Shown one piece after another: positions 8,919 to 62,871 of a stretch of DNA of 64,000 nt. The notes beneath the pieces were generated by a model. The model made no database searches. It saw only the letters and a program-made list of their open reading frames with translations, and was not told the origin of the DNA. A program made the position numbers and the translations under genes. Location of the stretch: the IMG/VR virus record IMGVR_UViG_3300027899_000001, positions 248,001 to 312,000 of that record. One strand, given 5' to 3'. Within the stretch, counting starts at the first letter, position 1. Every line of letters starts with the position of its first letter.

Positions 8919-9290
8919 TTAATTTTCTTGAACAGGATAAGAATTTCTATTTTCCATTTCTTTAATTACTTTTACGTATGATTTTTCTTCAGTATCAGGA
9001 GTATATAATTTAACAAGTTTAACGGGTTTTGACATCGCAAATGCCATACCTAAATCGAAGTGAGATCCTTTACTATTTACATCCCAGAAAATATCAACTC
9101 TATCAGCTTGTTGCATAAATTCCATATGTTTTCTACAAATAAAATAGCCAGTTGGATCAGTTTGATCGACAGCGTATTTGGGATTATGAACAGTATGGCC
9201 TTCTCCTTTTAATAATTCAACATAAGTATCTATTTCTTGTTGTTGATCATCTGTTACACCTCTTACGGGACAAATTAAATGTATTTTCAT
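8919..9290 (-). CDS. Nucleoside 2-deoxyribosyltransferase / N-glycosidase-like protein (NDT/Rcl/MilB fold)
   Basis: 'IHLICPVRG', 'MQQADRV', 'SKGSHFDLGMAFAMSKPV' motifs. Confidence 0.6.
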   Translation of the reverse strand: MKIHLICPVRGVTDDQQQEIDTYVELLKGEGHTVHNPKYAVDQTDPTGYFICRKHMEFMQQADRVDIFWDVNSKGSHFDLGMAFAMSKPVKLVKLYTPDTEEKSYVKVIKEMENRNSYPVQEN

Positions 9291-9934
9291 AAGTTTTGTT
9301 TTTTAAGTTTCCAATATTTTTTTAATCCTTCTGTTATTTTTAATCTTGATTCTAATGATACTGTTTTATTTTTATTTCCTATACTTATTTTTTGTCTAGT
9401 TTCTATTGAAGAACTTTTCCCTTTATACCCTGAATTTTTTCCTTTTCTTTTTTTACTCATTTTTTCTTTTGTTTCAATAGATGCTATTTTACCAATATGT
9501 GATTTACTATTTTTAATTTTGTGTTCTTCTGTATGAGGTTTTTGCATTTTTTCTATTACTTCTATTCTTTTCATTGCTAATTTTGTTTTTTCGCTTATAT
9601 TTTTTCGTTGTTCTTCAGTCATGGGTATACTTTTAATTTTTTCAATAGCATATTCATAATCTTTTGCTGATATATTATATTTCAGTTTTTTACTAGATGC
9701 CATTCTAAGAAAGGCGTATGCAATTTTTCGATTTTCATTATAAATATATGTTAATAATTTATGACAAATAAAGTGTTCTTTAGCTGTTAATAAAACTTTA
9801 TTTTCTTCATTATCATTACCCCCTAAACATTTTGGTAATATATGATGATTTTCATAATATACACTTGTTTCTTTTAATCTATTTTCTGATTTTGAATTTT
9901 GAATTATAGATTTATATATTTTTTGATAATTCAT
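9287..9934 (-). mobile_element. Free-standing HNH homing endonuclease with NUMOD3-like repeats
   Basis: 'YYENHHILPKCLGG.DN.EN.V.LTAKEHF.CH.LL' followed by basic repeats. Confidence 0.8.
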
Positions 9935-11010: not shown

Positions 11011-11676
11011 TTATTTATCAGTTTTAAATTTGCAATTTATAAAATGATATCTTATCATATTTGGGCCTCTACCTATTAAATTACAATATGGGCATATTAG
11101 TGTTTTAAAATTTTTAGGTTTTCCTTTTCTTTTTAAAGACATTTCATCTTTAATTTTTTTAGCTCGTTCTATTCCAAATATTTCTTCATATGTTTTACCA
11201 GTATTTTCTTTTGCACGTTTAACAATTCCATACGATTGATAATTTTTACCATACATTCCATTTTTTTCTCCTTTTATATCATTAGAATGCTTAATTTTTC
11301 TTTCTTCGGTATAATTAGATTTTAATGTTTCAGACATTTTAATTAACGTTTCATTTGAATGTTTTTTTCCAAACATGCCATTATCTTCTCCAAAAAACGC
11401 ACCGCCTACTGCATCATTTTTTAAATTATAATATAATGGATTATTTTTGGCATCTACTTCTTTTAATGTTTTATCTTCTATTTCTCTAAATTTATTTCCT
11501 ATATAAAGTATTTTTCTTTCAAAATTATCAACTCCGTATTTTTTAATAGCATTTATAAACACAGTTCCTGATCCTATATAATTATCTTGAACATCTCCAA
11601 GATGTGATCCTATATATTTTTTTCCATTTATATTATTTGTCCATTCGTAGACAAACCCACAATCATCATTAATCAT
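11011..11676 (-). mobile_element. Free-standing GIY-YIG (Seg-like) homing endonuclease
   Basis: 'GFVYEWTNNINGKKYIGSH...YIGSG...' plus NUMOD3 'GMFGKKHS' repeats. Confidence 0.8.
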
Positions 11677-18565: not shown

Positions 18566-18883
18566 TTAAATTTCATCTTCTGGTAAAATCTCTAAATCTT
18601 CTCCTTCAAGAAATGAATAAACATATTCATCTATAAATTGTTTTTGATATTCCGCAGGAGTATTATCAAGAATTGTATTTACAAGGTTATTTACGCCTTC
18701 TCTATTATAAAGTTCTTGTATTAAATAAGCAAATCCTTCATAATAAGTATCAACTTCTATATTATATCTTTTTAATTTTTCTGTAAGATATCTATTTCTA
18801 TTAAAACCTATTTTCATATCTTTAATAGGATCTGAATGTTCTTCAAATTTTTCATATAAAGATTCTTTAATAAGTTTTTTCAT
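18566..18883 (-). CDS. 'ESDPI-leader' family protein
   Basis: N-terminus MKKLIKESLYEKFEEHSDPIKDMKIG. Confidence 0.65.
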   Translation of the reverse strand: MKKLIKESLYEKFEEHSDPIKDMKIGFNRNRYLTEKLKRYNIEVDTYYEGFAYLIQELYNREGVNNLVNTILDNTPAEYQKQFIDEYVYSFLEGEDLEILPEDEI

Positions 18884-18891
18884 ATTAATAT

Positions 18892-19755
18892 TTATTTTTG
18901 ATCATCACCTTCCATAGCTCTAATTTCACGTCTATATTTCTTTTCATGTTCATATTCATACTCATGATAATCTGTAAAATACGGAGGTTTAGAAAGCTGT
19001 CTTCTATAATTTGCGCGGGGTACTATGTCTTTAAATGTAGGCGTTATAGTAAATCTTACTATTCGTGGTAATGTTACATCATCTTTTTTAAAATAATGTC
19101 TAATTAATCGCGGTTTAATTAAAATGGAAGAAAATCCCAAGTTATTAATAATATCTTTAACATATTTACCTAACTTATCAATTTCATTTTTCGGTAAGTT
19201 TTTAATTTTAGGATTATTAAACCAGAAATCTATATATCCATTACGTACATATACTGTAAAAATATAATGATTCTTATCAGCGTTTCCAAATAATTTAACT
19301 AAATCTTTGTATCTTGATTTTAATCCTATGCCCATATCATATATCGCATCATCACTTTCAATAAATTTTTCATCTATATGTTTTTGGGGTTTTATACGTT
19401 TTCCTGTATCTGGGTGTCTTTTAGGATATCCTAATTTTAATAATTTATTTCTTACACCCATATAAATATATGCAAAAGGATTACCAGTATGTCTGTTTTC
19501 CATTTTAGTATAATTCTTAGCGTATTCATCTAATATATTATAATATTTCCAATTAAATGCAGTATTTTCATCTTCAGGAAAAATGATATCATCAGGGATT
19601 TTATCTGTACCTAAAATAACAGTTAAATATTTAAAAAACCAATCTGCAGCGTCATCTTCATCTTTAAATCTACGTTTCGCATAAATTCCTATTCCTAAGT
19701 CATGAATGGGATCCGACTCTTCTATAAATTTTTCGTTAATATATTGTGCTCGCAT
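18892..19755 (-). CDS. 'ESDPI-leader' family protein, two tandem units
   Basis: N-terminal INEKFIEESDPIHDLGIG and internal IDEKFIESDDAIYDMGIG. Confidence 0.7.
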   Translation of the reverse strand: MRAQYINEKFIEESDPIHDLGIGIYAKRRFKDEDDAADWFFKYLTVILGTDKIPDDIIFPEDENTAFNWKYYNILDEYAKNYTKMENRHTGNPFAYIYMGVRNKLLKLGYPKRHPDTGKRIKPQKHIDEKFIESDDAIYDMGIGLKSRYKDLVKLFGNADKNHYIFTVYVRNGYIDFWFNNPKIKNLPKNEIDKLGKYVKDIINNLGFSSILIKPRLIRHYFKKDDVTLPRIVRFTITPTFKDIVPRANYRRQLSKPPYFTDYHEYEYEHEKKYRREIRAMEGDDQK

Positions 19756-19778: not shown

Positions 19779-19928
19779 TTAATCTTCATAATATATAAAT
19801 TCACGTCCTTCATAGTTTTTTAATTTTACACAATTTCCTTCACGTCCAACGTAATAATCTGGTAACATAGGTATTTTACCACCCGGAGTATCAATAATAA
19901 ACTGAGGAACAAACCTAAATTTTTTCAT
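19779..19928 (-). pseudogene. Stranded 3' end of kamA, present as its own 49-aa ORF
   Basis: Hand-translated MKKFRFVPQFIIDTPGGKIPMLPDYYVGREGNCVKLKNYEGREFIYYED*; matches the canonical KamA C-terminal pattern (VP.F.ID.PGG.KIP..P.Y...L.NYEG). Confidence 0.8.
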
Positions 19929-19939
19929 GAATATATAAA
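19929..19939 (+). promoter_or_regulatory. Putative late promoter motif GAATATATAAA
   Basis: Exact 11-mer 8 nt upstream of the endonuclease ATG at 19947. Confidence 0.5.
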
Positions 19940-19946
19940 ATAAAAA

Positions 19947-20966
19947 ATGAAAGAATTCAAAAAAGAAAAGAATTTATTTATATGTGAAGAATGCCAACGC
20001 ACATTTGTTAAAATCGATGGGTTAAGTAAACATATAAGACTTAATCACTATTCTCAAAAAACATATTATGATAAATGGCTAAAAGAAAATGATGAAAATA
20101 CTTGTAAAATTTGTAAAAAAGAAACAACATTTATAGGATTAGGAAAAGGTTATAAAAATTGTTGTTCATCTGACTGCACTAAAAAATTTAGAACACATAA
20201 AATTCAAGCAACTTTATTACTTAGATATGGTGTAAATTCTCCTACTAAAGATAAAACTATTAGAGAAAAAGTAAATAAAACGATGATAAAAAAATATGGG
20301 CATAAATGCCCTATGAAAAATGAAAAAATACAAAAAGAAATAAAACAAAATAATTTAAAAAAATTGGAAGTAGAATATCCATTTCAGTCTTTAAAAATTC
20401 AAGAAAAAATAATTATATCTAATTTAGAAAATTTCGGAGTAAAAAATACGTTTCAACGAATAGATGTAAAAAATAAAATAAAAGAAACTTGTATGCAAAG
20501 ATATGGAGTTGAAAATCCAAATAATAATAAAAAAGTTAGAGATAAAATAGAAAAAACTTGTATAGATAAATATGGAGTTAAAAATCCATCACAGAATAAA
20601 GAAGTGCATGATAAACAACAAAAAAACGCGTGTTATTCAAAAAAATATAAAAATACTATTATAAACTATAGAGCATCTTATGAATATGATTTTTTAGAAA
20701 AATTTTACCCAGTATATTCTGATATAGTTAATGGCCCAACAATAAAATATCAATATAAAAATGAATCCAGATTATATTTTCCAGATTTTTACATTCCATC
20801 TTTAAATCTTATCGTTGAAATAAAAAATTCTTATCTTTTAAAAAAAGATAAAGAAAAAATAGAAGCAAAGAAAAAATATACTATTCTTAATGGGTATAAT
20901 TATTTAATAATTACTAATAAAGATTATTCTACATTTTCTTCATATCTTAAAATTTCTCCAGTATAA
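19947..20966 (+). mobile_element. Homing-endonuclease-like protein (C2H2 finger, YGV.NP repeats, C-terminal PD-(D/E)xK nuclease)
   Basis: 'FICEECQR...HIRLNH'; repeated 'YGVxNP'; 'YFPDFYIPSLNLIVEIK'. Confidence 0.7.
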
Positions 20967-22099
20967 CTTTTAAATTCATATACATGATCTTTATGCGATA
21001 TAATGTTATCACAGACTTCAATTTTTCCTAAATGAGAATCTACAATAAATGTTGGACACGCGTAACCACTCGTCCAGCCTCTCAATGCTGAGATAATCTG
21101 AAGTCCTTTATTAATAGTAGTTCTAAAATGACTTGTACCTGCAACAAGATCGCATGCATATATATAATATGGTCTAACTCTAATTGTAAGAAGACTATTC
21201 ATAAGCTTTTTCATAATTTGTGGGTCATCGTTAACGCCTTTGAGTAATACTGTTTGAGAACCTAAAGGAATTCCTGCATTCGCAAGCTTTTCACACGCTT
21301 GTTTAACTTCTGAAGTTATTTCATCGGGATGAGAGAAATGAATACTTATGAATAAAGGATGATATTTCTTTAAGATATTAGTTAACTCTGGCGTAATTCT
21401 TTGAGGTAACACAACAGGAACTTTAGTTCCAATTCTTAAGAACTCAACGTGTTTTATTTCTTTAATTTCTTTAAGAAGATATTCTATACTATCGTCATTC
21501 ATAGTTAAAGGATCTCCTCCAGATAATAACACATCTCGTATCTCAGTATGTTCTCTAATATACTGAAGCGCCTTTTCCCACGCTTTCTTAGGAATTCGTT
21601 CTCTATTTATGAGTCTACTTCTTGTACAGTATCGACAATTTGAAGAACAAAAGTCCGTGGTTAGAAATAATACACGATCTGGATATCTATGAACTATACA
21701 TTCCACAGGACTTTGATGTTCTTCGTTCAGCGAGTCGTTTTTCTCATTTTCAGTTACGTGAAGTTCGTTATTGGTTGGAATAACGCACTTTCCGATTCCT
21801 TCTGAAAGAGAAGTGATTGTACTTGCATAATATGGAGTAATTCTTAATGGTAAATTTATATTCTTGGATAATTCATAATTTGAATCTCCAAATATACGAC
21901 TCAATTCTTCATATGTAGTTATACTGTTACGTATCTGCCAATGCCAATCATTCCAATTAGTATCAGATACATCTGAATAAAATCTATTTTTAAAAGATTG
22001 AGTTTTTTCGGAGATGATAAGAGGGGGTTCTTCAGTATCAACGATAATCTCCTGAGCTGGTTGATACTGGTTTTTAGACGAATCTATTTGTTGTTCCAT
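20924..22099 (-). CDS. kamA: KamA-family radical SAM lysine 2,3-aminomutase
   Basis: 'WNDWHWQIRN', 'VHRYPDRVLF...CSSNCRYCTR', 'LLSGGDPL', PLP-Lys 'LLKGVND', 'VRPYY'. Confidence 0.85.
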   Translation of the reverse strand: MEQQIDSSKNQYQPAQEIIVDTEEPPLIISEKTQSFKNRFYSDVSDTNWNDWHWQIRNSITTYEELSRIFGDSNYELSKNINLPLRITPYYASTITSLSEGIGKCVIPTNNELHVTENEKNDSLNEEHQSPVECIVHRYPDRVLFLTTDFCSSNCRYCTRSRLINRERIPKKAWEKALQYIREHTEIRDVLLSGGDPLTMNDDSIEYLLKEIKEIKHVEFLRIGTKVPVVLPQRITPELTNILKKYHPLFISIHFSHPDEITSEVKQACEKLANAGIPLGSQTVLLKGVNDDPQIMKKLMNSLLTIRVRPYYIYACDLVAGTSHFRTTINKGLQIISALRGWTSGYACPTFIVDSHLGKIEVCDNIISHKDHVYEFKSYTGEILRYEENVE

Positions 22100-22659: not shown

Positions 22660-22992
22660 TTATGTTTGTCTAATTCTAAATCCTCTTCGTTGTAACATTT
22701 TTTGTAACATCTCAGAATCAAACCAGGGGTTTTCTCCTTTTATTTTACAATATTCATTAATAAACATTTGTATATCATGATGATATTTTTCATTTATATA
22801 ATAAGTATTAGATTTAATTATATCGTTAGGTATTGTAGGAGTTTTTAAAATTTGAGGTAATATTTTTATTATATATTGAAACATTCGTACATCATCAGGA
22901 AAATTTTTCTTGGTGTGAGTTATTCCAATACCCATATCATAAATGGGATCAGATTCTTCTACAAATTTTTCAAATACATATTGCGCTTTCAA
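22660..22992 (-). CDS. 'ESDPI-leader' family protein
   Basis: MKAQYVFEKFVEESDPIYDMGIG (TTG start); its payload resembles unit 1 of 18892-19755. Confidence 0.7.
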   Translation of the reverse strand: MKAQYVFEKFVEESDPIYDMGIGITHTKKNFPDDVRMFQYIIKILPQILKTPTIPNDIIKSNTYYINEKYHHDIQMFINEYCKIKGENPWFDSEMLQKMLQRRGFRIRQT

Positions 22993-23126: not shown

Positions 23127-23816
23127 TTGGAAATCATGAATCATCAAAAAGTCTATGAATCTATAATTCAGAGAGCAAAATCTGAAAATAGAATTAAACT
23201 TAATAGAAATAATGAAAATTATATTTATTATGAAAATCATCATATTTTGCCCAAATGCTTAGGTGGAAATAATGATAAAGATAATTTGGTTTTATTAACA
23301 GCAAAGGAACATTATGTCTGTCATAAATTACTTACATATATTTATAAAGAAAACGCAAAAATATACGGTGCTTTTTTCTATATGTCATTTAATAAAAAAT
23401 ATGACAAATTTTTATCAGCTCGAGATTATGCTTACGCAATAGAATTAAATACTATCGCACATATTAATAAAAAACAATCGTTAGAAACAAAAGAAAAAAG
23501 AAGAAAATCAATGTTAGGTAAAAACAAAGGAAAAAAAATGAAAAAAGAATTTGGCGAAAACATTTCTAAACGTTTAAAAGGAAACATTCCTTGGAATAAA
23601 GGAAAACCCGGGTGTTTTTCAAATGATACTATTAATAAAATGTCAATAGCTGCAATAGGAGTAAAAAATTCATTAGAATCAAATGAAAAAAATAGGCAAT
23701 CTCATATAGGAAAAACTACATGGAATAAAGGATTAACAAAAGAAATTGATGAACGGGTTTTAAAATGTTCACTTAAAATTTCTAAAACTCTTAAAAATAA
23801 AAATTTATTAAATTAA
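23127..23816 (+). mobile_element. Free-standing HNH homing endonuclease
   Basis: 'YYENHHILPKCLGGNNDKDNLVLLTAKEHYVCHKLL'; paralog of 9287-9934; 'PWNKG' repeats. Confidence 0.8.
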
Positions 23817-30803: not shown

Positions 30804-31730
30804 ATGGCACGACCTAAAAAAGTAAAAGTAGAAGAACCTGCTAAAATAGCAGTAGAAGAAAAAGAAACTCTAAATGATATTATAATTGAAAAAAGTAACA
30901 TTTATCCATTAGGAGAAATACAGATTGTAGATAATCCGGTGTTTGAAGTTCCATATTTGGAATTTAATTATAATAAAGAGTCTGACACCATTTCTCTAGA
31001 AAAACAAAAACAAACAATACAAGTTAGCACTTCTAGAGTAGGCACGCATATAACTTCAGAACAAGCTAAAGAATTTAAAGATAAATTTAATTTAGACTTA
31101 AACGAAGTTGTTAAAAAAGCATTGATAAATGAAGCTTCTCAACAATTAACAAAACATTATATATCAAAAATTGGAGAAGCTGCTACAGAAAATTATATTA
31201 AAGAATATACCCGTTGGGATAAGTTTAAAGTATGGGCATATAAACTTGTTAAAAAACAATATAGAAAAAAAATAAAAATTCAAACTTCTAAAGAGTTAAA
31301 TTATAGAATTTTAAAAGAAGCCAATAATATTGCAGCAAATAGTAGATGGGGAAGTGGAAATTTTGTTATATGTAGTTTAAAAACTGCTATGCTTTTACAG
31401 AGTTCATCTAATTTTGTATATGCTACTTTAAATAAACCTGTATCTACAAATGGCAGTATTTATCCAATTGGAACTATTGCAGGCGTGACTATTTATGTAG
31501 ATCCTTATATGTTATATCAAGATACTAATGTATACATAGGAAGAAGAAATAATACAAATCAGCCTGGCATAAAACTATTTTTTAAAGAATCTTATAGTTA
31601 TATGCAAACGGAAGGTCTTGGTGCTCCAAAGGTTATATTAGAAATGAGATACGCAATCGCAGGCGTTGGTAAAAATTATAAAGACCAATATAGAAAATTT
31701 GAATACATTGATAAAATCATAAACAAATGA
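30804..31730 (+). CDS. Truncated paralog of the major capsid protein
   Basis: 'NGSIYPIGTIAGVTIYVDPYMLYQDTNVYIGR...TEGLGAPKVILEMRYA' aligns with 'NGSLYPLGTIAGMTLYVDPNMLYSDTRVLVGR...TEGTGAPKVIIKTRYA' in 56803-58575. Confidence 0.8.
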   Translation: MARPKKVKVEEPAKIAVEEKETLNDIIIEKSNIYPLGEIQIVDNPVFEVPYLEFNYNKESDTISLEKQKQTIQVSTSRVGTHITSEQAKEFKDKFNLDLNEVVKKALINEASQQLTKHYISKIGEAATENYIKEYTRWDKFKVWAYKLVKKQYRKKIKIQTSKELNYRILKEANNIAANSRWGSGNFVICSLKTAMLLQSSSNFVYATLNKPVSTNGSIYPIGTIAGVTIYVDPYMLYQDTNVYIGRRNNTNQPGIKLFFKESYSYMQTEGLGAPKVILEMRYAIAGVGKNYKDQYRKFEYIDKIINK

Positions 31731-34651: not shown

Positions 34652-35383
34652 GTGGAAAAGATTAAAGTTTATACATATCACGGATTTGGCGATCAGTGTA
34701 TCTGTTATGGAATTCTTAAAGAATTTGCAAAAAGATATAATGAAGTAAAAGTGTATTCTGATGTAATGAATAAAAATACATTTAATTCAATTACTCGTTT
34801 ATATTCTAGCCTGAAAAATGTAGAATTAATAGATGAAGTCTATAAAGAAGAAATTCACGCTGCTGATCATAAAATAGCTCATACTAAATACTGGTTTGAT
34901 AAAGTTCTTCCATGGTATCAAGATCCATCATTACCTCCACCAGAATGGTTTAAAGATGATTGGTGGTTTGATAGACAATGGTATTTAAATGCTAGTTTGC
35001 CATTTAATTTAAAATGGGATAATTTTTATTTTGAAAGAGATTTAAATAAAGAAAAAGAAGTTTTTTATGATATCTTGGGCTTAAAAGATAATCAAGAATT
35101 TTTATTTTTTCATGAAGATCCTGTAAGAAATTATAATATTAATAAAAAACATCTAAATGCAAATATTAAATGGATAGATTTTTTTAATTATCAAGATATT
35201 AGCATATTAGATATTTTATATACTATTGAACATGCTAAAGAAGTGCATACTTTTAATACAAGTACATTAACATTTATTGATTTAATGAATATTCAGCACC
35301 CTGCTTTATATTATCATATGTATGTAAGACCATCAATATTTGATAGTATAAATTTAAGATTACCTTGGAATTTAATAACATAA
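34652..35383 (+). CDS. Putative GT-B glycosyltransferase, paralog 1 of 3
   Basis: 'HGFGDQ...G', 'WDNFYFERD', 'YTIEHAKEVH'. Confidence 0.55.
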   Translation: MEKIKVYTYHGFGDQCICYGILKEFAKRYNEVKVYSDVMNKNTFNSITRLYSSLKNVELIDEVYKEEIHAADHKIAHTKYWFDKVLPWYQDPSLPPPEWFKDDWWFDRQWYLNASLPFNLKWDNFYFERDLNKEKEVFYDILGLKDNQEFLFFHEDPVRNYNINKKHLNANIKWIDFFNYQDISILDILYTIEHAKEVHTFNTSTLTFIDLMNIQHPALYYHMYVRPSIFDSINLRLPWNLIT

Positions 35384-35386
35384 AAT

Positions 35387-36124
35387 ATGAAAGTATATAC
35401 ACATACGCAATTTGGAGATCATGTTGTAACATTTGGAATTATTAAAGAATATTCAAAACAATATGATGAAGTAATATTAACTATTAGTGATAACGCACAA
35501 GGAACTTTAGTAAGTTCTTCTCATAATGATAATATTAAAAGATTATTTTCAAGTATTCCTAATGTAGTTTTAACAACTGAACGATTTGCAGATAATGAAT
35601 ATGATAAAATTATTAGTAGCGGTTGGTGGTATGAACAAGTTAAGCCATGGTTTGAAAATCAAGATTTACCATATACATTAGGAGATAATATGATAGGAGA
35701 TAGATTTTGGTATATTCTTGGTGGTGTTCCATTTTATTTAAAATGGGATAATTTTTACTTTGAAAGAGATCCCAAAAAAGAAAAAGAAGCATATTATGAT
35801 ATATTTGGATTAAAAGAAAATCAACAATATTTATTTTTACATGAAGATCCAAAAAGAAATAATGGAATATGTATAAATAGGAAGTATGTTAGTGATATGT
35901 ATAGAGTAATTGAATTAGCAAAATATCCTGAAGTAAGCGTGTTAGATATTTTATACACTATTGAAAAAGCTAAAGAAGTGCATATTATTAATACTGGATT
36001 AAGATCTTTTATAGATTTAATGAATATAAATCATAACAATTTAATTTATCATAAATACACAAGACCTAATCCAGTAGAACAAGCAGCAATGAGATTAAAT
36101 TGGAAAGTAATAGATAAATTTTAA
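35387..36124 (+). CDS. Putative GT-B glycosyltransferase, paralog 2 of 3
   Basis: 'QFGDH...G', 'WDNFYFERD', 'YTIEKAKEVH'. Confidence 0.55.
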   Translation: MKVYTHTQFGDHVVTFGIIKEYSKQYDEVILTISDNAQGTLVSSSHNDNIKRLFSSIPNVVLTTERFADNEYDKIISSGWWYEQVKPWFENQDLPYTLGDNMIGDRFWYILGGVPFYLKWDNFYFERDPKKEKEAYYDIFGLKENQQYLFLHEDPKRNNGICINRKYVSDMYRVIELAKYPEVSVLDILYTIEKAKEVHIINTGLRSFIDLMNINHNNLIYHKYTRPNPVEQAAMRLNWKVIDKF

Positions 36125-44517: not shown

Positions 44518-45234
44518 ATGGAAAATTCAATATACATTTACCATCATCTTGGGTTAGGCGATCATTTTCTTTGCAATGGAATAGTAAGAACCTATGCAGA
44601 AAGATACGATAAAGTATTTTTATTTGCAAAACCACGAAATAATACTAATGTTGTACGTTTGTATAAAGATCTAACAAAATTAAAAGTGCTACCATTAGAT
44701 GATCCAGATGTAAGATTTTTTATGCAAATAAATCCTAATAATAATTATAAAATTATAGGAATAACTCCAGAATGGTTTAGAAAATTAGATGTAGAAAAGG
44801 CATTCTTATCATTTGATCACGGATTCTATGTAGCAGCTGATGTTCCATTTGAAGATAAATGGAATAAATTTTACTTTGAAAGAGATATTGAATCTGAGAA
44901 AAATGCATATTATAATAGACTTAATTTAAAAGATGAAGAAGAATATTTATTTGTTCATGACGATAGAGAAAGAGGAAGATATTTTAAACCTGAAACTATA
45001 GAAAAAGGAATTAAAATTATTAGAGCAACTGATTATAAAGATGTGGGAATATTTGATTTTATATACACAATAGAACATGCTAAAGAAGTTCATGTAATGA
45101 ATAGTTCTTTTTCCTGTTTAATAGATACTATGCAAATAAAAAATGATCATTTATTTTATCATCATTATGCAAGAACAGATATGGGAGAAAATCCTAATCA
45201 TCAATTTAAATTAAATTGGACAATTTTAAAATAA
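44518..45234 (+). CDS. Putative GT-B glycosyltransferase, paralog 3 of 3
   Basis: 'HLGLGDH..CNG', 'WNKFYFERD', 'YTIEHAKEVH'. Confidence 0.55.
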   Translation: MENSIYIYHHLGLGDHFLCNGIVRTYAERYDKVFLFAKPRNNTNVVRLYKDLTKLKVLPLDDPDVRFFMQINPNNNYKIIGITPEWFRKLDVEKAFLSFDHGFYVAADVPFEDKWNKFYFERDIESEKNAYYNRLNLKDEEEYLFVHDDRERGRYFKPETIEKGIKIIRATDYKDVGIFDFIYTIEHAKEVHVMNSSFSCLIDTMQIKNDHLFYHHYARTDMGENPNHQFKLNWTILK

Positions 45235-46916: not shown

Positions 46917-47696
46917 ATGAAAATATATGTAGATAAAGATGTAAATATATTTGAAGGAGAAGCTGCTGAAAAATTATTAAAAGAACATAATGACAAACAA
47001 TATTTTATAAAAAATGTAGGTGTTCCTAAAGTAGATATTGAACGTTGGAATGAAGCGCAATCATATGAACGAAAAACTTGGTGTGATTCTGCAGCTAAAA
47101 ACATGGAAACTGATCATAATGAAGAGCATGAAAAACACTTTGGTGGATATGAAGAATTAAATTTTATGCTTCCTAACACATATCTTAATATAATTGAATT
47201 AGGATGTGGGCCATTTACTAATTTACGATTAATAGTTCCAAAAATATATCATCTGCCTATTAAAAATATTGATTTATTAGATCCGCTTATAAACGAATAT
47301 ATCAATCATTCTCCATCCTGTGCATATAAAAACGGTTATTTAAATATGTTAAAAGTTAATTTATATAATTGTGCTATAGAAAATTATATAACAACAAAAG
47401 AATATCAATTAGTTGTAATGATAAATGTAATAGAACATTGTTTTGATGTTGATGAAATATTTAAAAAAATATCTAATATATTATGTGATAATGGTATTTT
47501 TATTTTTCATGATAAATTTATTAAAGAAAAAAATATTGATGAATTTTATGAAAGAATTTATGATTCTGGACATCCTTTAAAATTAACGTATAAATATATT
47601 GAAGATATAATAGAAACAAATTTTAAAACTTTATATACAAAATCATATATAGATCAATATGATAATGAATGTATATATAAAATACTTAAAAAATAA
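46917..47696 (+). CDS. Class I SAM methyltransferase
   Basis: 'IELGCGP', 'NVIEH'. Confidence 0.75.
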   Translation: MKIYVDKDVNIFEGEAAEKLLKEHNDKQYFIKNVGVPKVDIERWNEAQSYERKTWCDSAAKNMETDHNEEHEKHFGGYEELNFMLPNTYLNIIELGCGPFTNLRLIVPKIYHLPIKNIDLLDPLINEYINHSPSCAYKNGYLNMLKVNLYNCAIENYITTKEYQLVVMINVIEHCFDVDEIFKKISNILCDNGIFIFHDKFIKEKNIDEFYERIYDSGHPLKLTYKYIEDIIETNFKTLYTKSYIDQYDNECIYKILKK

Positions 47697-47701
47697 TTTT
47701 A

Positions 47702-47749
47702 ATGAATAAAAAAATAGCGCTTATCACCGGGATAACTGGCCCACATTAA
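47702..47749 (+). pseudogene. Stranded 5' remnant of gmd (MNKKIALITGITGPH*)
   Basis: Hand-translated; aligns with NKKIALVTGING at the start of the intact gmd. Confidence 0.8.
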
Positions 47750-47804
47750 ATATCAATTATGTCAGTAATTAAAATAATATATACAATAAACGATTTTATA
47801 TATT

Positions 47805-48566
47805 ATGGGAAGAAAAAAACAAGAAATTATATTTGAAAAAAGACTCTGCGAAGAATGCAGTAATGAATTTATAATAAATAAAAAATCAAAAAAGAGGTTT
47901 TGTTGTTCTATTTGTGCAAAAAGAAATAATGGAAAAAGAAATAAAGGAAAAAAACATTTTGATGAAATAAACAAAAAGAAAGGATTAATTGGAGAAAAAA
48001 ATCCAATGTTTGGAAGATCATATTATGATATTTGGATAAATAAATTTGGAAAAGAGATAGCAGACGAAAAATTAAATCAAATTAAAGAAAATAAAAAAGG
48101 TAAAAAACATACTAAAGAACATAATAAAAAAATAAGTGAATCATTACGTGGTTTAAAAAATCCTTTCTTTGGAAAAAAACATAAACCCGAGTCATTAGCA
48201 AAAATAAGTGAAAACCATAGAGATTGTAAAGATAAAAATAATCCTATGTTTGGGCAGGGCGATAAAATTAGAAGAGAAAAAAATGGTTCATGGTTTGGAG
48301 GAATAAGTAATGAGCCTTATGATACACTATTTAATGAAGAACTTAAAACTAAAGTAAGAATTAGAGATAATTATAAATGTGTTATTTGTGGAAAATCTGG
48401 GTATGTTGTGCATCATATAGATTATAATAAACATAATAGTATAGAAGAAAACTTAGTAACTTTGTGTAAAAGTGATCATATGAAAACAAATTCTCATAGA
48501 GATAGTTGGATAGAATTTTTTAAATCGATAATAAATATGTTGTATGAGTATAAAATTAAGCAATAA
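47805..48566 (+). mobile_element. Free-standing HNH endonuclease with NUMOD3-like repeats
   Basis: 'NPMFG/NPFFG' repeats; C-terminal 'RDNYKC..C...VHHIDYNK.N....NL.TLC..H'. Confidence 0.8.
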
Positions 48567-49608
48567 AAAAATTGCCCTGGTGACTGGTATCAACGGGCAA
48601 GATGGTTCCTATTTGGCTGAACTACTTTTATCAAAGGGATATATTGTGCATGGCATAATAAGAAGAGCATCTTCTTTTAATACACAACGCATTGATCATA
48701 TTTTTTCAAATTCAAATTTAACATTACATTTTGGTGATGTAACTGATGCATTAGCAATTGATGATCTTATAAAAAATCTTCAGCCTACTGAAATTTATCA
48801 TTTAGCAGCGCAATCACATGTTAAAGTTTCTTTTGATCTTCCAAGATATACAGCAGAAGTAGATGCAATTGGAACATTAAATATTCTTGAATCTATAAGA
48901 AAACATTCTCCAAAAACAAAATTATATAATGCATGTACATCAGAATTATTTGGAAAAGCCTCAGAAATTCCTCAAAAAGAAACTACAAGATTTCACCCAA
49001 GAAGTCCATATGGAGTAGCAAAATTATATTCATATTGGATTCTTGAAAATTATGTAGAATCTTATGGAATATTTGCAATTAATGGCATACTTTTTAATCA
49101 TGAAAGTGAAAGACGAGGCGAAACATTTGTTACAAGAAAAATAACAATCGGATTATCTAAATTCTCAAATAGTTATCAGGTTGTTCAAAATTATAAACAA
49201 ATTGTTCCGCCATTGTCTATGGGAAATCTTTATTCTAAAAGAGATTGGGGATATGCACCAGATTATGTTGAGGCTATGTGGATGATGCTTCAACAAGAAA
49301 ATCCAGAAACCTTTGTTATTGCAACAGGAGAAACTCACACGATAAAAGAATTTATTGATGAAGCTATTAAATATACTCCATTTAGTGGAAAAGTTAAATG
49401 GATAGGAGAAGGCGTAGATGAAAAACTTATGTATAATAATATAATACTTATAGAAATTGATCCTAAATATTATAGGCCTGCTGAAGTAGAACATCTTGTA
49501 GGAGATTATTATAAAGCAAAAACTAAACTTAAGTGGAAACCAACAACAACATTTCATGAATTAGTTAGAAAAATGATGATTTGCGATTTAGAACAATTTA
49601 GTAAATAA
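48544..49608 (+). CDS. gmd: GDP-mannose 4,6-dehydratase
   Basis: 'TGINGQDGSYLAE.LL.KGY.VHG..RR', 'LAAQSHV', 'PRSPYGVAK', 'FNHES.RRG.TFVTRKI', 'RDWG'. Confidence 0.95.
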   Translation: MSIKLSNKKIALVTGINGQDGSYLAELLLSKGYIVHGIIRRASSFNTQRIDHIFSNSNLTLHFGDVTDALAIDDLIKNLQPTEIYHLAAQSHVKVSFDLPRYTAEVDAIGTLNILESIRKHSPKTKLYNACTSELFGKASEIPQKETTRFHPRSPYGVAKLYSYWILENYVESYGIFAINGILFNHESERRGETFVTRKITIGLSKFSNSYQVVQNYKQIVPPLSMGNLYSKRDWGYAPDYVEAMWMMLQQENPETFVIATGETHTIKEFIDEAIKYTPFSGKVKWIGEGVDEKLMYNNIILIEIDPKYYRPAEVEHLVGDYYKAKTKLKWKPTTTFHELVRKMMICDLEQFSK

Positions 49609-56802: not shown

Positions 56803-58575
56803 TTAAATAACTGAACCACTATTAGTTTCAAACCAAAGTGTAATATATTGAGTTTCTGGGTGGAAACCTGCGTCAACTAAAGCGTATCTAGTTTTGATGA
56901 TAACTTTAGGAGCACCTGTACCTTCAGTAATAAGCTTAACGCTTTCAGCCATAAGGTATGGGCAGAATACTGTTCCTGGTTCATCAATAGCACCTTTTCT
57001 TCCTACAAGTACTCTGGTATCAGAATAAAGCATGTTAGGATCTACATAAAGAGTCATTCCAGCGATTGTTCCGAGAGGATACAATGAACCGTTAGATTGA
57101 GTAAATGTATTGGTTATAGGTGAGAATGTGTAACCAGCATTTGTTTGAAGAGCTGTAGCAATTTTAAGGTTAGTAACAATAAAGTTAGCAGGACCTCTTC
57201 TTCCTCTTTGCATGATAACGTTACCAGCTGCAAGAATATTAGCCATAACTCTTTTGATAATTGTGTCTTGGTTTTCAAATGTTGCACCAACTACTGATGT
57301 ATATTTTGCGAATCCTGGAACAGTCATTGCTCCTGTAGTAACAGAACCAGCATCATTATATGCAAATGCAGTTGAATTAAGAGAACCTGTAGATGTACAG
57401 TTCATGTTAAGGTTAATACCTTCAACAGCGTTAGCTTTGATATGGTTTTTCCAACCGTGACCGAACAATCTTGAAAGAATGTGTTTGTTAATAGCTTGGC
57501 TAATTTCGTTGATTCCAGCATTTTCTACCATTGCGATAACATCAATACCCCATTGTTTATTAAGATCTTGAATTTGTTCCTGAGTAACAGAAACTGATAC
57601 TTGGAATGTGCCTACTTGTACAAATTTAGTAAATACCTGAAGACCAAGAGCTCTTGGATATTCCATTTCACCAACGCCTCTTTCCATAGGTTCATAAAGA
57701 GTAGTGCCTGAGACGAATGTTCCTCCCCAGTCAGCATTATCTGTTTGACCTGCACCGGTAAATCCTTGTACTTGATCTTCCAATGTGGAAATAAGTGTAG
57801 GATAAGTAGTAACATTATAAAGTAATGATTGATTTAATAGAGGAGCGACGTTTCCTGTACCATTGAAAATATCAGCCAAATTATCACCTGCTGTTCCAAA
57901 TGTTCCAGTTTTAAACATTGGGAAACCATCAATTCTTGATTTTCCAATATAAGTAGCTGTTAATGTAGAAGCACCTGTAGATACGTTTGTTGCTGAGTTA
58001 AATATTAAAGATGTTCCATTAGTAATTGTTCCTGCTGTAATAAGAGCTTGAACAGATGCATCAAGTTGAATTTTGAATGCATGAGGAGCATCGTATTGAC
58101 CATAAGCAGCAGAACCTTGGAAAGTAGCAGGATTTGCTGTTGCAGGACTAACTGCTGGTTGTGCGCCAAATGGTTGTTTTCCTCCAGCGTATACATAATC
58201 TAAATAGGATACAACTCCTGTTGGACCTGGCATAGGAACCACGTTAACAAGGTCAAAACCTATTGTTCTAGCGGCTACTTGAAGAGCCATAGGAAGAAGT
58301 GCAGGCCATTTGTCACCTGAACCTTTAACAGTTGTACCTGTAAATTGAGCTCCTGTAGTAGCTGCAACTGATGCAGGAACTGCAGTACCAACACCTGGTA
58401 CGTTGTAAAGAGTTGCATAAGGAACGGATACACCACCCATAGCAGCTTCATTTAATGCATGAAAATGTGCGTATTTAGAAATCCAACTCAATCTGTTTTT
58501 ATCTTTAAGACCAGTTACAGTTTCAATCATTGGAGACCATTTTTGCACAATTTGTTGTTCGTTTAATTGTTTCAT
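56803..58575 (-). CDS. gp23: Major capsid protein, T4 gp23-like
   Basis: 'KWSPMIE', 'DLVNV.PM.GPTG', 'EQIQDL...GID', 'NEI...IN', 'GTIAG', 'TRYAL'; downstream of the protease/scaffold gene. Confidence 0.9.
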   Translation of the reverse strand: MKQLNEQQIVQKWSPMIETVTGLKDKNRLSWISKYAHFHALNEAAMGGVSVPYATLYNVPGVGTAVPASVAATTGAQFTGTTVKGSGDKWPALLPMALQVAARTIGFDLVNVVPMPGPTGVVSYLDYVYAGGKQPFGAQPAVSPATANPATFQGSAAYGQYDAPHAFKIQLDASVQALITAGTITNGTSLIFNSATNVSTGASTLTATYIGKSRIDGFPMFKTGTFGTAGDNLADIFNGTGNVAPLLNQSLLYNVTTYPTLISTLEDQVQGFTGAGQTDNADWGGTFVSGTTLYEPMERGVGEMEYPRALGLQVFTKFVQVGTFQVSVSVTQEQIQDLNKQWGIDVIAMVENAGINEISQAINKHILSRLFGHGWKNHIKANAVEGINLNMNCTSTGSLNSTAFAYNDAGSVTTGAMTVPGFAKYTSVVGATFENQDTIIKRVMANILAAGNVIMQRGRRGPANFIVTNLKIATALQTNAGYTFSPITNTFTQSNGSLYPLGTIAGMTLYVDPNMLYSDTRVLVGRKGAIDEPGTVFCPYLMAESVKLITEGTGAPKVIIKTRYALVDAGFHPETQYITLWFETNSGSVI

Positions 58576-61697: not shown

Positions 61698-62515
61698 TCT
61701 GTCTGTATTTCTCCGTTTACAGCACAAACCTTTTTAACATCTCTCCTTGAAAAATTTTTATAATTACCATGACAATAAAAACTTGCGCCTACATATTTAG
61801 GAGCAAATTCAAGAGATTTTAGTCTATTATTACTACAAGAAAATAATCCTGTTACAAATACAGGACATCCTCTTAAAGAAGTGAGATGATTATTTTGTAA
61901 AGTAAACATCCCTTGTATTTTATTAAATTGTATGTAAGAAGGAAATTCTGTAAGACCTTTCCATTTTAATATTACATTTTCATTAACATCAATGGTTAAA
62001 TCATCATTTATAGTATAATGTTTAATTTCATACTCATCTAACCATTTTTTTATTTTGATTTTAAATCCTATACCCATATCATAAATAGGATCTGATTCTT
62101 CTGTAAAAGCCTCTGATATAGTATTTTTATTAAGTTCGCTTTCTTTAAAAACTTTAAAATATTTTTTCCAACGTGAAATTGACGCAGTATTTGTTGCTTG
62201 AGAATATGTTCTTTCTTTTCCATTTAATATATTCTTTCTTATATCTAAAAATATTGGATTAATAGTGTATCCATAAGGAACAAGATTTAATTGTAATTCA
62301 TTTTTTGATAAATGTTTTATGTGATATACTATGTATAAACCAGTAGCGGGAAATGGCGTCTTATCATTAAATGCAAAATATTTACTTTCTTTAAGACATC
62401 TAAGAACATCTCCTACTTCAAGATTTTCAAAACCCTTATAACCTATTCCCATATCTTTAATAGGATCAAACTCTTCAGTAAATTTTTCGTTAATATGTTC
62501 TCTAATCAATTTCAT
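61694..62515 (-). CDS. 'ESDPI-leader' family protein, two units; the second carries LRR-like repeats
   Basis: INEKFTEEFDPIKDMGIG; internal ISEAFTEESDPIYDMGIG; 'NNHLTSLRGCP..V.G.FSCSNNRLKSLEFAP'. Confidence 0.7.
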   Translation of the reverse strand: MKLIREHINEKFTEEFDPIKDMGIGYKGFENLEVGDVLRCLKESKYFAFNDKTPFPATGLYIVYHIKHLSKNELQLNLVPYGYTINPIFLDIRKNILNGKERTYSQATNTASISRWKKYFKVFKESELNKNTISEAFTEESDPIYDMGIGFKIKIKKWLDEYEIKHYTINDDLTIDVNENVILKWKGLTEFPSYIQFNKIQGMFTLQNNHLTSLRGCPVFVTGLFSCSNNRLKSLEFAPKYVGASFYCHGNYKNFSRRDVKKVCAVNGEIQTD

Positions 62516-62871
62516 TAATCTTTAATGATGTATTTTTCTGTTGGAATTATATGATATGTAAGAGTAGTTATTCCTTTTCCTTTTACATTTATTAATCCGT
62601 CTCTATTCATAATTATTTCATCGACAAGAACTTCACAATGTTTTCGTGTAGAGGAGTATTTTCCAGCTTCATATAGATCCATTATTCCAGATATTCGTTT
62701 TCCATGAAATTGATATACAAATTTTACCCATTTTTGCCATACTAGATTTTCAAAATCTTTGTATATAGAAAAATATTTATCTTCAAATACTATATATCCT
62801 ATACCTAAATCATGTATTGGATCTGACTCTTCAGTAAATTTTTCGTATAATTTCTCCTTTAATTTTTTCAC
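62515..62871 (-). CDS. 'ESDPI-leader' family protein
   Basis: LYEKFTEESDPIHDLGIG. Confidence 0.7.
   Translation of the reverse strand: MKKLKEKLYEKFTEESDPIHDLGIGYIVFEDKYFSIYKDFENLVWQKWVKFVYQFHGKRISGIMDLYEAGKYSSTRKHCEVLVDEIIMNRDGLINVKGKGITTLTYHIIPTEKYIIKD

What the first reader, a model, noticed from the sequence alone, without database searches (positions are those of the whole stretch)
47702..48620. HNH element replaces the gmd 5' end with a fully wobble-recoded copy
Seen: the remnant AAT AAA AAA ATA GCG CTT ATC ACC GGG ATA ACT GGC (NKKIALITGITG, then PH*) versus the working AAT AAA AAA ATT GCC CTG GTG ACT GGT ATC AAC GGG (NKKIALVTGING). Ten of 12 residues are identical, yet all nine third positions after codon 3 differ. 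The new start lies in the HNH's last 23 nt. Inference: selection to destroy the nuclease target and repeat homology while keeping the Rossmann motif. With the kinase and kamA cases, three different nuclease architectures use the same splice-free 'carry a spare gene end' strategy within one window.
Basis: partly seen in the sequence, partly recalled or inferred. Interest (0 to 1): 0.75.

Follow-up and report, generated by a model that had tools for sequence, protein, structure and literature searches.

The report
Homing nuclease cassette carrying spare gene start
A selfish nuclease gene has inserted itself 13 codons into a sugar-metabolism gene (gmd) of a giant T4-like phage and keeps that gene working, without any splicing, by bringing its own replacement start and first codons; the same cassette recurs next to gmd in at least 18 other phage sequences.

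Summary
A 15-codon orphan ORF (47702-47749) repeats the N-terminus of the working GDP-mannose 4,6-dehydratase gene (48544-49608). An HNH/NUMOD3 nuclease gene (47805-48566) lies between them and overlaps the gmd start by 23 nt. It is not an intron: no intron model matches here or in 8 related loci, and in two relatives the orphan piece has lost its glycines and start codon.

All 18 distinct homologues of this HNH that I examined (about 39-64% identity where full-length; two are partial ORFs) sit directly 5' of a gmd. Eleven keep an upstream gmd remnant, nearly all cut at the same glycine codon, in at least six unrelated upstream contexts. The closest gmd relative (82% aa) has no nuclease, and its 5' end resembles the remnant. 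The remnant is therefore the resident end and the working end came with the cassette.

The "9 of 9 wobble" count is not significant by itself (empirical P about 0.09). Family-wide signals do point to nucleotide-level constraint: an invariant GGG codon in 10 of 11 remnant-bearing cassettes and locally GC-rich wobble positions.

The closest known analogue is the fungal mitochondrial mobile ORF that carries a foreign gene C-terminus. I found no phage or 5'-end case in the papers searched. The kamA case is confirmed; the kinase case was not found.

The parts
47672..47685 (+). Promoter-like box just upstream of the remnant, probably the resident gmd promoter. It has one mismatch to the genome's box ATATATA[ACT]AATAA.
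   Evidence: Read. The box occurs 32 times within 45 nt upstream of 350 genes and 0 times in coding sequence.
47702..47749 (+). Remnant of the resident gmd 5' end (MNKKIALITGITG, then PH and stop). The homologous part is 47702-47740.
   Evidence: It matches the N-terminus of the nuclease-free relative L005 (MNKVALITGITGQDGSY). Equivalent remnants are cut at the same glycine in L094, L095, L097, L098, L101, L103, L105, L085 and L265; L266's is cut a few codons earlier.
47747..47775 (+). Conserved left end of the cassette: a stop codon, a 13-nt imperfect palindrome (47747-47759) and a CAGTAAT-type box.
   Evidence: Alignment A2 of 7 loci, mean column identity 73%. The palindrome changes on both arms in L097 and L094 but is mismatched in the window, L098 and L103.
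47777..47789 (+). Cassette's own promoter-like box, 15 nt upstream of the HNH start.
   Evidence: The same box precedes the kamA-linked nuclease at 19931.
47805..48566 (+). Free-standing homing endonuclease gene, 253 aa: N-terminal Cys4 motif, NUMOD3 repeats, C-terminal HNH.
   Evidence: Pfam, PHROGs, 36 invariant columns including the HH...N...H motif in 14 homologues. All 18 distinct homologous loci lie directly 5' of gmd.
48544..48597 (+). Spare gmd 5' end carried by the cassette. The start codon lies inside the HNH 3' end. Codons 48562-48597 duplicate the remnant. It ends in the GGG codon (48595-48597).
48598..48660 (+). Probable co-conversion tract (QDGSYLAELLLSKGY) that resembles the gmd of the HNH's relatives. 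The end point is approximate.
   Evidence: the first 3 informative sites side with L097/L094/L098; 22 of the later 28 side with L005/L101.
48544..49608 (+). Working GDP-mannose 4,6-dehydratase gene (354 aa), the only gmd in the 405-kb genome.

Best explanation
This is a mobile homing-endonuclease cassette specific for gmd. It is inserted inside the gene, in the codons for the TGxxGxxG nucleotide-binding motif. From left to right the cassette holds a stop codon, a small palindrome, a phage promoter box, the HNH/NUMOD3 nuclease gene, and a new gmd start codon (inside the nuclease's 3' end) followed by a replacement copy of the first 13-18 codons. The resident first 13 codons are left upstream as a dead remnant.

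Proposed mechanism (inferred). During co-infection the nuclease cuts nuclease-free gmd alleles near codons 13-15. The break is repaired from the cassette-bearing genome. The gmd body serves as the right homology arm and the remnant as the left arm, so the cassette can enter gmd whatever gene lies upstream. gmd stays functional without RNA or protein splicing because the cassette supplies the missing 5' end. That end is spelled with different synonymous codons (an invariant GGG, GC-rich wobble positions). This plausibly makes the rebuilt site uncuttable and leaves too little identity with the remnant (longest perfect match 11 nt) for recombination to delete the cassette.

Shown here: the architecture, its recurrence, the decay of some remnants, the nuclease-free sister allele, the disagreement between the trees, and the codon constraint. 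Inferred: nuclease activity, cut site, immunity, and the role of the remnant as a homology arm.
For: Anatomy.
Recurrence: all 18 distinct HNH homologues examined lie directly 5' of gmd and mostly overlap its start by 8-23 nt.
Remnants: present in 11 loci, nearly all ending at the same glycine codon plus at most 2 codons and a stop, in at least 6 unrelated upstream contexts.
Not spliced: remnants in L098 (IIHGINELH*) and L101 (LSELRGMH*) have lost glycines and the start codon. No Rfam intron hit at E<=10 in the window or E<=1 in 8 related loci. Only 64 nt lie upstream and 31 nt downstream of the HNH ORF.
Resident versus imported end: the nuclease-free L005 gmd is sister to the window's (82% aa, SH-aLRT 96). 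Its 5' end matches the remnant (ITGITG), with 27/36 nt identical and 8 of 9 differences synonymous.
Horizontal movement: in the HNH tree the window groups with L097/L094/L098 (89/98). In the GMD tree it groups with L005 and L101 (99). The mosaic 5' tract is.
Nucleotide constraint: GGG in 10 of 11 remnant-bearing cassettes, against 9/45 in nuclease-free gmd and 0/9 in remnants. A neighbouring Gly codon uses all four codons in the cassettes. GC3 is 0.49 in the spare end against 0.20 in the gene body.
Own promoter box.
Same strategy elsewhere in this genome: kamA and a gene at genome position 365.6 kb.
Against: There is no biochemical or RNA evidence: no RNA run was listed and the read laying was uninformative. 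The cut site and the immunity are inferred. The window's own 0/9 wobble identity is within chance. The GGG rule has an exception among remnant-bearing loci (L266, GGT) and does not hold in loci with a doubtful or no remnant (L104, L264). Loci within clades are not independent. The palindrome's covariation is mixed. The HNH-tree support for incongruence is moderate (89/98). Six or seven gmd-linked HNH loci show no clear remnant, so a purely intergenic state also exists.
Confidence: 0.8

Rival explanations
1. A group I or group II intron holding the HNH ORF. The remnant would be exon 1, spliced onto QDGSY... at about 48598.
For: The remnant ends exactly where the conserved gmd sequence resumes 857 nt later, and joining them would give a perfect GMD N-terminus. 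The last base before CAA is G, as in group I introns. Short N-terminal exons have been overlooked in phages before (PMC10448857).
Against: No intron model matches here or in 8 related loci. Only 64 and 31 nt of non-ORF sequence flank the HNH. An in-frame ATG plus a second, protein-conserved copy of the N-terminus sits just before the supposed 3' splice site in every locus. Remnants in L098 and L101 have lost essential glycines and the start codon. The remnant's last base is not consistently U.
Confidence: 0.03
2. A one-off by-product. An ordinary free-standing nuclease gene that normally sits between genes (intronless homing, as for T4 seg and mob genes) entered this genome by one-sided homologous repair plus an illegitimate join. 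The remnant would be junk with no role, and the codon differences would reflect only the donor's ancestry.
For: Six or seven gmd-linked HNH loci show no clear remnant (L183, L108, L109, L129, L264; L104 doubtful; L107's upstream is cut off). The 0/9 wobble count is within chance. The working end clearly has a different ancestry from the remnant.
Against: The remnant is cut at the same codon in 10 loci, in at least 6 unrelated upstream contexts and in three GMD clades. The left end is conserved. GGG is invariant while other wobble positions are saturated. Same-locus wobble identity (15%) is below that of unlinked pairs (24%).
Confidence: 0.12
3. A local tandem duplication of the gmd 5' end within this phage, with later insertion of the nuclease gene between the copies and in-place divergence.
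For: The two copies share an 11-nt identical run and 10/12 residues.
Against: The working end and the following 12 or more codons resemble the gmd of the HNH's relatives, not the resident lineage. The working end's GC3 is 0.67 against 0.04 in the gene body. The same structure occurs in distant gmd lineages.
Confidence: 0.03

Closest known systems
Mobile ORF elements (mORFs) of fungal mitochondria that create 'gene hybrids' (Allomyces macrogynus atp6, Paquin et al. 1994; Glomus atp6, atp9, cox2, nad3, PMC3630166; partial atp6 and cob duplications next to endonuclease ORFs, PMC6279837)
   Same: An endonuclease ORF inserts inside a conserved gene together with a foreign copy of the displaced gene end. 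The native end stays behind as a remnant. The native remnant is closer to the sister taxon than the inserted copy is. No splicing is needed.
   Different: Those elements replace the 3' end, and the ORF (GIY-YIG or LAGLIDADG) is usually in phase with the host gene. Here an HNH/NUMOD3 gene in a phage replaces the 5' end, start codon included. It has its own promoter box and overlaps the new start out of frame. The kamA case in this window is the closer 3'-end counterpart.
Free-standing homing endonucleases of T4-like phages and intronless homing (seg and mob genes; review PMC2988022)
   Same: An HNH or GIY-YIG gene with NUMOD-type DNA-binding repeats, in a T4-like genome rich in such genes (about 20 here). 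It is present or absent between relatives, targets a conserved gene next door, and co-converts flanking markers.
   Different: T4-type elements sit between genes, or split a gene into two polypeptides (Aeh1 nrdA, T4 genes 39/60). The 2010 review does not mention duplication or replacement of a gene end.
T4 mobA plus the gene 60 50-nt bypass element (bioRxiv 10.1101/2022.08.31.505936; Bonocora et al. 2011, cited from memory)
   Same: A nuclease gene travels with an adjacent sequence change in its target gene that keeps the gene functional without RNA or protein splicing. In T4 this change is thought to protect the carrier from cutting.
   Different: T4 uses ribosomal bypassing of an insert. Here a second, differently spelled gene end with its own start codon is used.
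Engineered 'home-and-rescue' gene drives (HomeR, PMC7968924)
   Same: A nuclease cassette is inserted in a needed gene and carries a recoded, cut-resistant rescue copy of the disrupted part.
   Different: That system is man-made, Cas9-based and built in insects. It is an analogy of logic only.

Membership tests
HNH homing endonuclease (free-standing, NUMOD3-type) | HNH catalytic motif | tested here: met
   Pfam HNH (21.7 bits against a 21.4 cut-off). HNH_3 is below its cut-off. PHROGs HNH families. H203, H204, N216 and H225 are invariant in 14 homologues.
HNH homing endonuclease (free-standing, NUMOD3-type) | DNA-binding module typical of homing endonucleases | tested here: met
   NUMOD3, E 1.8e-13, above the cut-off.
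HNH homing endonuclease (free-standing, NUMOD3-type) | Present or absent between close relatives at a fixed site in a conserved target gene | tested here: met
   L005 lacks it, the window has it, and their GMDs are sisters. 18 of 18 homologous loci are gmd-linked.
HNH homing endonuclease (free-standing, NUMOD3-type) | Site-specific cutting of the empty allele, and homing | not testable with these tools
   Needs biochemistry or co-infection crosses.
Group I or group II intron | Conserved catalytic RNA fold | tested here: not met
   No Rfam match at E<=10 in 47400-48900, nor at E<=1 in 8 related loci.
Group I or group II intron | The upstream exon stays under protein-coding constraint | tested here: not met
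   The remnants in L098 and L101 have decayed.
Group I or group II intron | Spliced RNA | not testable with these tools
   No RNA run was listed.
mORF 'gene hybrid' elements (fungal mitochondria) | Endonuclease ORF plus an inserted duplicate of the gene end plus a native-end remnant | tested here: met
mORF 'gene hybrid' elements (fungal mitochondria) | The native remnant is closer to the sister taxon than the inserted copy is | tested here: met
   Against L005 over 9 codons: remnant 18/27 nt and 8/9 aa; working end 15/27 nt and 6/9 aa. The stretch is short, so support is modest.
mORF 'gene hybrid' elements (fungal mitochondria) | 3'-end replacement with the ORF in phase downstream of the host gene, in a mitochondrial genome | tested here: not met
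   Here the 5' end is replaced, the nuclease ORF is upstream and overlaps out of frame, and the genome is a phage's.
Intein | An in-frame Hint domain within the host protein | tested here: not met
   The window GMD matches the Pfam profile without interruption. An intein is present in the gmd of relative L095.

The most novel reading that the evidence does not exclude
Phages harbour a widespread class of intron-like but splice-free 'home-and-rescue' cassettes. In these, a homing nuclease inserts inside a conserved gene and carries a differently spelled replacement of the displaced gene end. The dead native end acts as a homology arm and makes homing independent of the neighbouring genes. Unrelated nuclease families use the same strategy (HNH at gmd, TnsA-like at kamA, HNH at a third gene in this genome). 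It would be a fourth way, beside introns, inteins and split genes, for nucleases to live inside phage genes. It would also be a source of mis-annotated orphan mini-ORFs and mosaic gene ends.
Probability: 0.5. Interest if true: 0.75.

Novelty: new variant of a known kind. Interest (0 to 1): 0.6.

Why it matters
Homing nucleases are known to persist inside genes by hiding in introns or inteins, or by splitting genes. Carrying a spare gene end is documented for the 3' ends of fungal mitochondrial genes. In six literature searches I found no phage case and no 5'-end case; that is not an exhaustive survey.

This is a whole family: 18 loci, one target gene and one insertion codon. It gives a directly testable system for how a nuclease protects its own carrier (the invariant GGG codon) and how little flanking homology homing needs (a remnant of about 40 nt). 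It is a natural counterpart of engineered home-and-rescue drives.

Practically, such cassettes leave orphan mini-ORFs and chimeric gene ends. These mislead gene calling and single-gene phylogenies in phage metagenomics.

Tried and rejected
- RNA evidence: no RNA run holds the region. Laying the one DNA run's contigs gave only 20-40-nt scraps and says nothing about the assembly.
- Intron: Rfam at permissive thresholds found nothing, so this reading was rejected.
- PDB sequence search gave only a weak HNH-domain match to an IscB, which adds little.
- A first ungapped scan for flank duplications was swamped by AT-rich low-complexity matches, and its null was unusable. It was replaced by a filtered BLASTP scan.
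It did not appear around any of the 20 nuclease genes or in a window-wide scan for duplications 300-2500 nt apart. The latter scan also missed the weak kamA pair, so this is not proof of absence.
- The window's 9/9 wobble count as evidence of selection was rejected as insufficient on its own.
- L085 as donor of the working end was rejected: its gmd is only 43% identical.
- The palindrome as a structured RNA hairpin is left open, because its covariation is mixed.
- Translational bypass from the remnant to gmd was considered and dismissed: the gap is 857 nt and contains a full gene with its own promoter box.

Full report
**What the genome is.** The window is bases 248001-312000 of a 405,016-bp IMG/VR virus record with direct terminal repeats. 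The record encodes T4 gp23-type capsid proteins and no NCLDV capsid. GC content is about 27%. The only sequencing run holding the region is a freshwater metagenome. It is therefore a jumbo T4-like phage. It carries about 20 putative homing-endonuclease genes: HNH+NUMOD3, GIY-YIG+NUMOD3 and a TnsA-like type.

**The observation.** It is correct.
- ORF 47702-47749 reads MNKKIALITGITGPH*.
- ORF 47805-48566 (253 aa) has NUMOD3 (E 1.8e-13) and an HNH domain.
- ORF 48544-49608 is a full-length GDP-mannose 4,6-dehydratase (GMD), matching Pfam profile positions 1-332 of 332 at E 4e-128. It starts MSIKLSNKKIALVTGINGQDGSY, and its ATG lies 23 nt inside the HNH ORF.
- Over the 12 shared codons, 25/36 nt and 10/12 residues agree. 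All nine third positions after AAT AAA AAA differ.
- It is the only gmd in the genome.
- A second IMG/VR contig is base-identical over 9.8 kb around the site.

**It is not an intron.** Rfam finds no group I or II intron in 47400-48900 at E<=10, none in the whole window at gathering thresholds, and none in eight related loci at E<=1. Only 64 nt precede the HNH ORF and 31 nt follow it. In every related locus a second in-frame copy of the N-terminus, conserved as protein and with its own ATG, sits directly before QDGSY. In L098 and L101 the upstream piece has decayed (IIHGINELH*, LSELRGMH*) and has lost motif glycines and its start codon. A spliced exon encoding part of the TGxxGxxG nucleotide-binding motif could not tolerate that. 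No RNA run was listed, so splicing could not be tested directly.

**It is a family, not an accident.**
- Protein and locus searches and context look-ups gave 18 distinct loci with homologues of this HNH, at about 39-64% identity where the ORF is full-length (L107 and L129 are partial).
- In all 18 the nuclease gene lies directly 5' of a gmd. It usually overlaps the gmd start by 8-23 nt.
- More distant HNH relatives sit in other contexts.
- Eleven loci keep an upstream gmd 5' remnant: the window, L094, L095, L097, L098, L101, L103, L105, L085, L265 and L266. L104 is doubtful.
- In ten of the eleven the remnant stops at the same glycine codon (the second G of the motif), followed by at most two codons and a stop. 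L266's remnant is cut a few codons earlier.
- The upstream neighbour genes fall into at least six unrelated contexts.
- In the window's clade the left end is conserved: stop codon, a 13-nt imperfect palindrome, a CCAGTAAT box and an ATATATAAAATAA box 8-22 nt before the HNH start.
- That last box is a genuine phage promoter-type signal. ATATATA[ACT]AATAA occurs 32 times within 45 nt upstream of 350 genes of this genome and never in coding sequence. A near-perfect copy also precedes the remnant (47672-47685).

**Which copy is resident.**
- The closest gmd (L005, 82% aa) has no nuclease gene and begins MNKVALITGITGQDGSY. That is the remnant's version (ITGITG), not the working copy's (VTGING).
- Remnant against L005: 27/36 nt identical. 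Eight of the nine differences are synonymous and one is Ile/Val (and direct reading). So the remnant evolved as a functioning gene start until recently.
- In the GMD tree the window is sister to L005 (SH-aLRT 96) and then to L101 (99). Nuclease-linked genes need at least six gains or losses.
- In the HNH tree the window groups with L097/L094/L098 (89/98), and L101 groups with L103.
- Along the window's gmd, the first three informative sites (in ...ELLLSKGY) side with the HNH's relatives. Of the later 28, 22 side with L005/L101.
- Together these fit a recent entry of a cassette from an L097/L094-like donor into an L005-like gmd, with a short co-conversion tract.

**Was the spare end recoded by selection?**
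- The window's 0/9 wobble identity is not significant by itself. Its working end against 45 unrelated nuclease-free gmd 5' ends also gives 0/9 in 4 cases.
- The glycine codon just before Gln is GGG in 10 of the 11 remnant-bearing cassettes (L266 has GGT), and also in L107, whose upstream is cut off. It is GGG in 9/45 nuclease-free phage gmd genes and in 0/9 remnants. The other motif glycine uses all four codons among the same cassettes.
- GC3 of the nine codons before Gln is 0.49 in cassettes against 0.20 in the body of the same genes (window 0.67 against 0.04). Nuclease-free genes show 0.26 against 0.30.
- Same-locus remnant/working wobble identity is 12/81 (15%). Unlinked remnant/working pairs give 24%, and native/native pairs give 35%.
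- I read this as real nucleotide-level constraint on the cassette's spare end. Protection from the nuclease and avoidance of repeat recombination are plausible reasons. The evidence is correlative, and the loci are not phylogenetically independent.

**Mechanism proposed.** The inferred steps are marked in the best explanation. The nuclease cuts empty gmd alleles near codons 13-15. Repair copies the cassette, with the gmd body as the right arm and the remnant as the left arm. The recipient's own first codons become the new remnant. gmd is expressed from the resident and cassette promoter boxes and is translated from the new ATG inside the HNH 3' end.

**Comparison with known systems.**
- The same logic is documented for fungal mitochondrial mobile ORFs. 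These insert a foreign C-terminus of atp6, atp9, cox2 or nad3 and leave the native C-terminus behind (PMC3630166, citing Paquin et al. 1994; PMC6279837).
- For T4-like phages, the 2010 review lists introns, intergenic free-standing genes and split genes, but no gene-end replacement (PMC2988022).
- The T4 mobA/gene 60 bypass cassette is the nearest phage analogue in logic.
- Engineered home-and-rescue drives use the same design (PMC7968924).
- My six literature searches found no phage or 5'-end description. That is not proof that none exists.

**Other cases in this genome.**
- kamA (minus strand, 20924-22099) ends in a divergent C-terminus that overlaps a convergent TnsA-like/DUF7487 nuclease gene (19947-20966). 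That nuclease gene has the same promoter box. Beyond it lies an orphan ORF (19779-19928) encoding a more canonical KamA C-terminus, 33% identical to the working one.
- A third flank duplication surrounds the HNH gene at genome position 364849-365553, outside the window.
- The 'kinase' case was not found.

Noticed in passing
window 19779-22099: kamA (minus strand, 20924-22099) carries a divergent C-terminal 45 residues that overlap a convergent TnsA-like/DUF7487 nuclease gene (19947-20966). An orphan ORF (19779-19928) beyond the nuclease encodes a more canonical KamA C-terminus (33% identical, pairwise E 1e-5). This is a 3'-end version of the same spare-end layout.
   Followed up: partly
genome G000:C1:364710-366251 (outside the window): An HNH/NUMOD3 gene at 364849-365553 is flanked on the minus strand by a 21-residue duplicate (FIGMKPEDL... 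against FIGVKPEDA...) of the C-terminus of the neighbouring 222-aa ORF. This is possibly a third spare-end case.
   Followed up: no
L095:1352-3655: In this relative the gmd downstream of the HNH cassette also contains an intein (Intein_splicing/HINT, residues about 180-569). gmd therefore hosts two kinds of selfish element in one phage.
   Followed up: partly
whole genome; window 8252, 18272, 19931, 26949, 47777: The box ATATATA[ACT]AATAA occurs 32 times within 45 nt upstream of genes and 0 times in coding sequence. It is a likely promoter consensus of this phage group, close to the T4 late promoter TATAAATA.
   Followed up: partly
whole genome: The 405-kb genome holds about 20 homing-endonuclease-like genes. 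Five are in the window: 9287-9934, 11011-11676, 19947-20966, 23127-23816 and 47805-48566.
   Followed up: partly
window 34661-36100 and 44518-45234; L005:1-681; L129: There are tandem paralogues (44% identical) of a 238-aa protein of unknown function. In relatives L005 and L129 this protein is the gene directly upstream of gmd. Gene order around gmd is rearranged in the window.
   Followed up: no
window 18566-19755, 22660-22992, 61853-62779: A multi-copy family of small proteins shares the N-terminal motif EKF.EESDPI.D.GIG.
   Followed up: no
window 30966-31658 (+) and 56854-58305 (-): There are two separate gp23-type capsid-protein matches: a 595-aa ORF and a 315-aa ORF (probably the major capsid and vertex proteins).
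   Followed up: no
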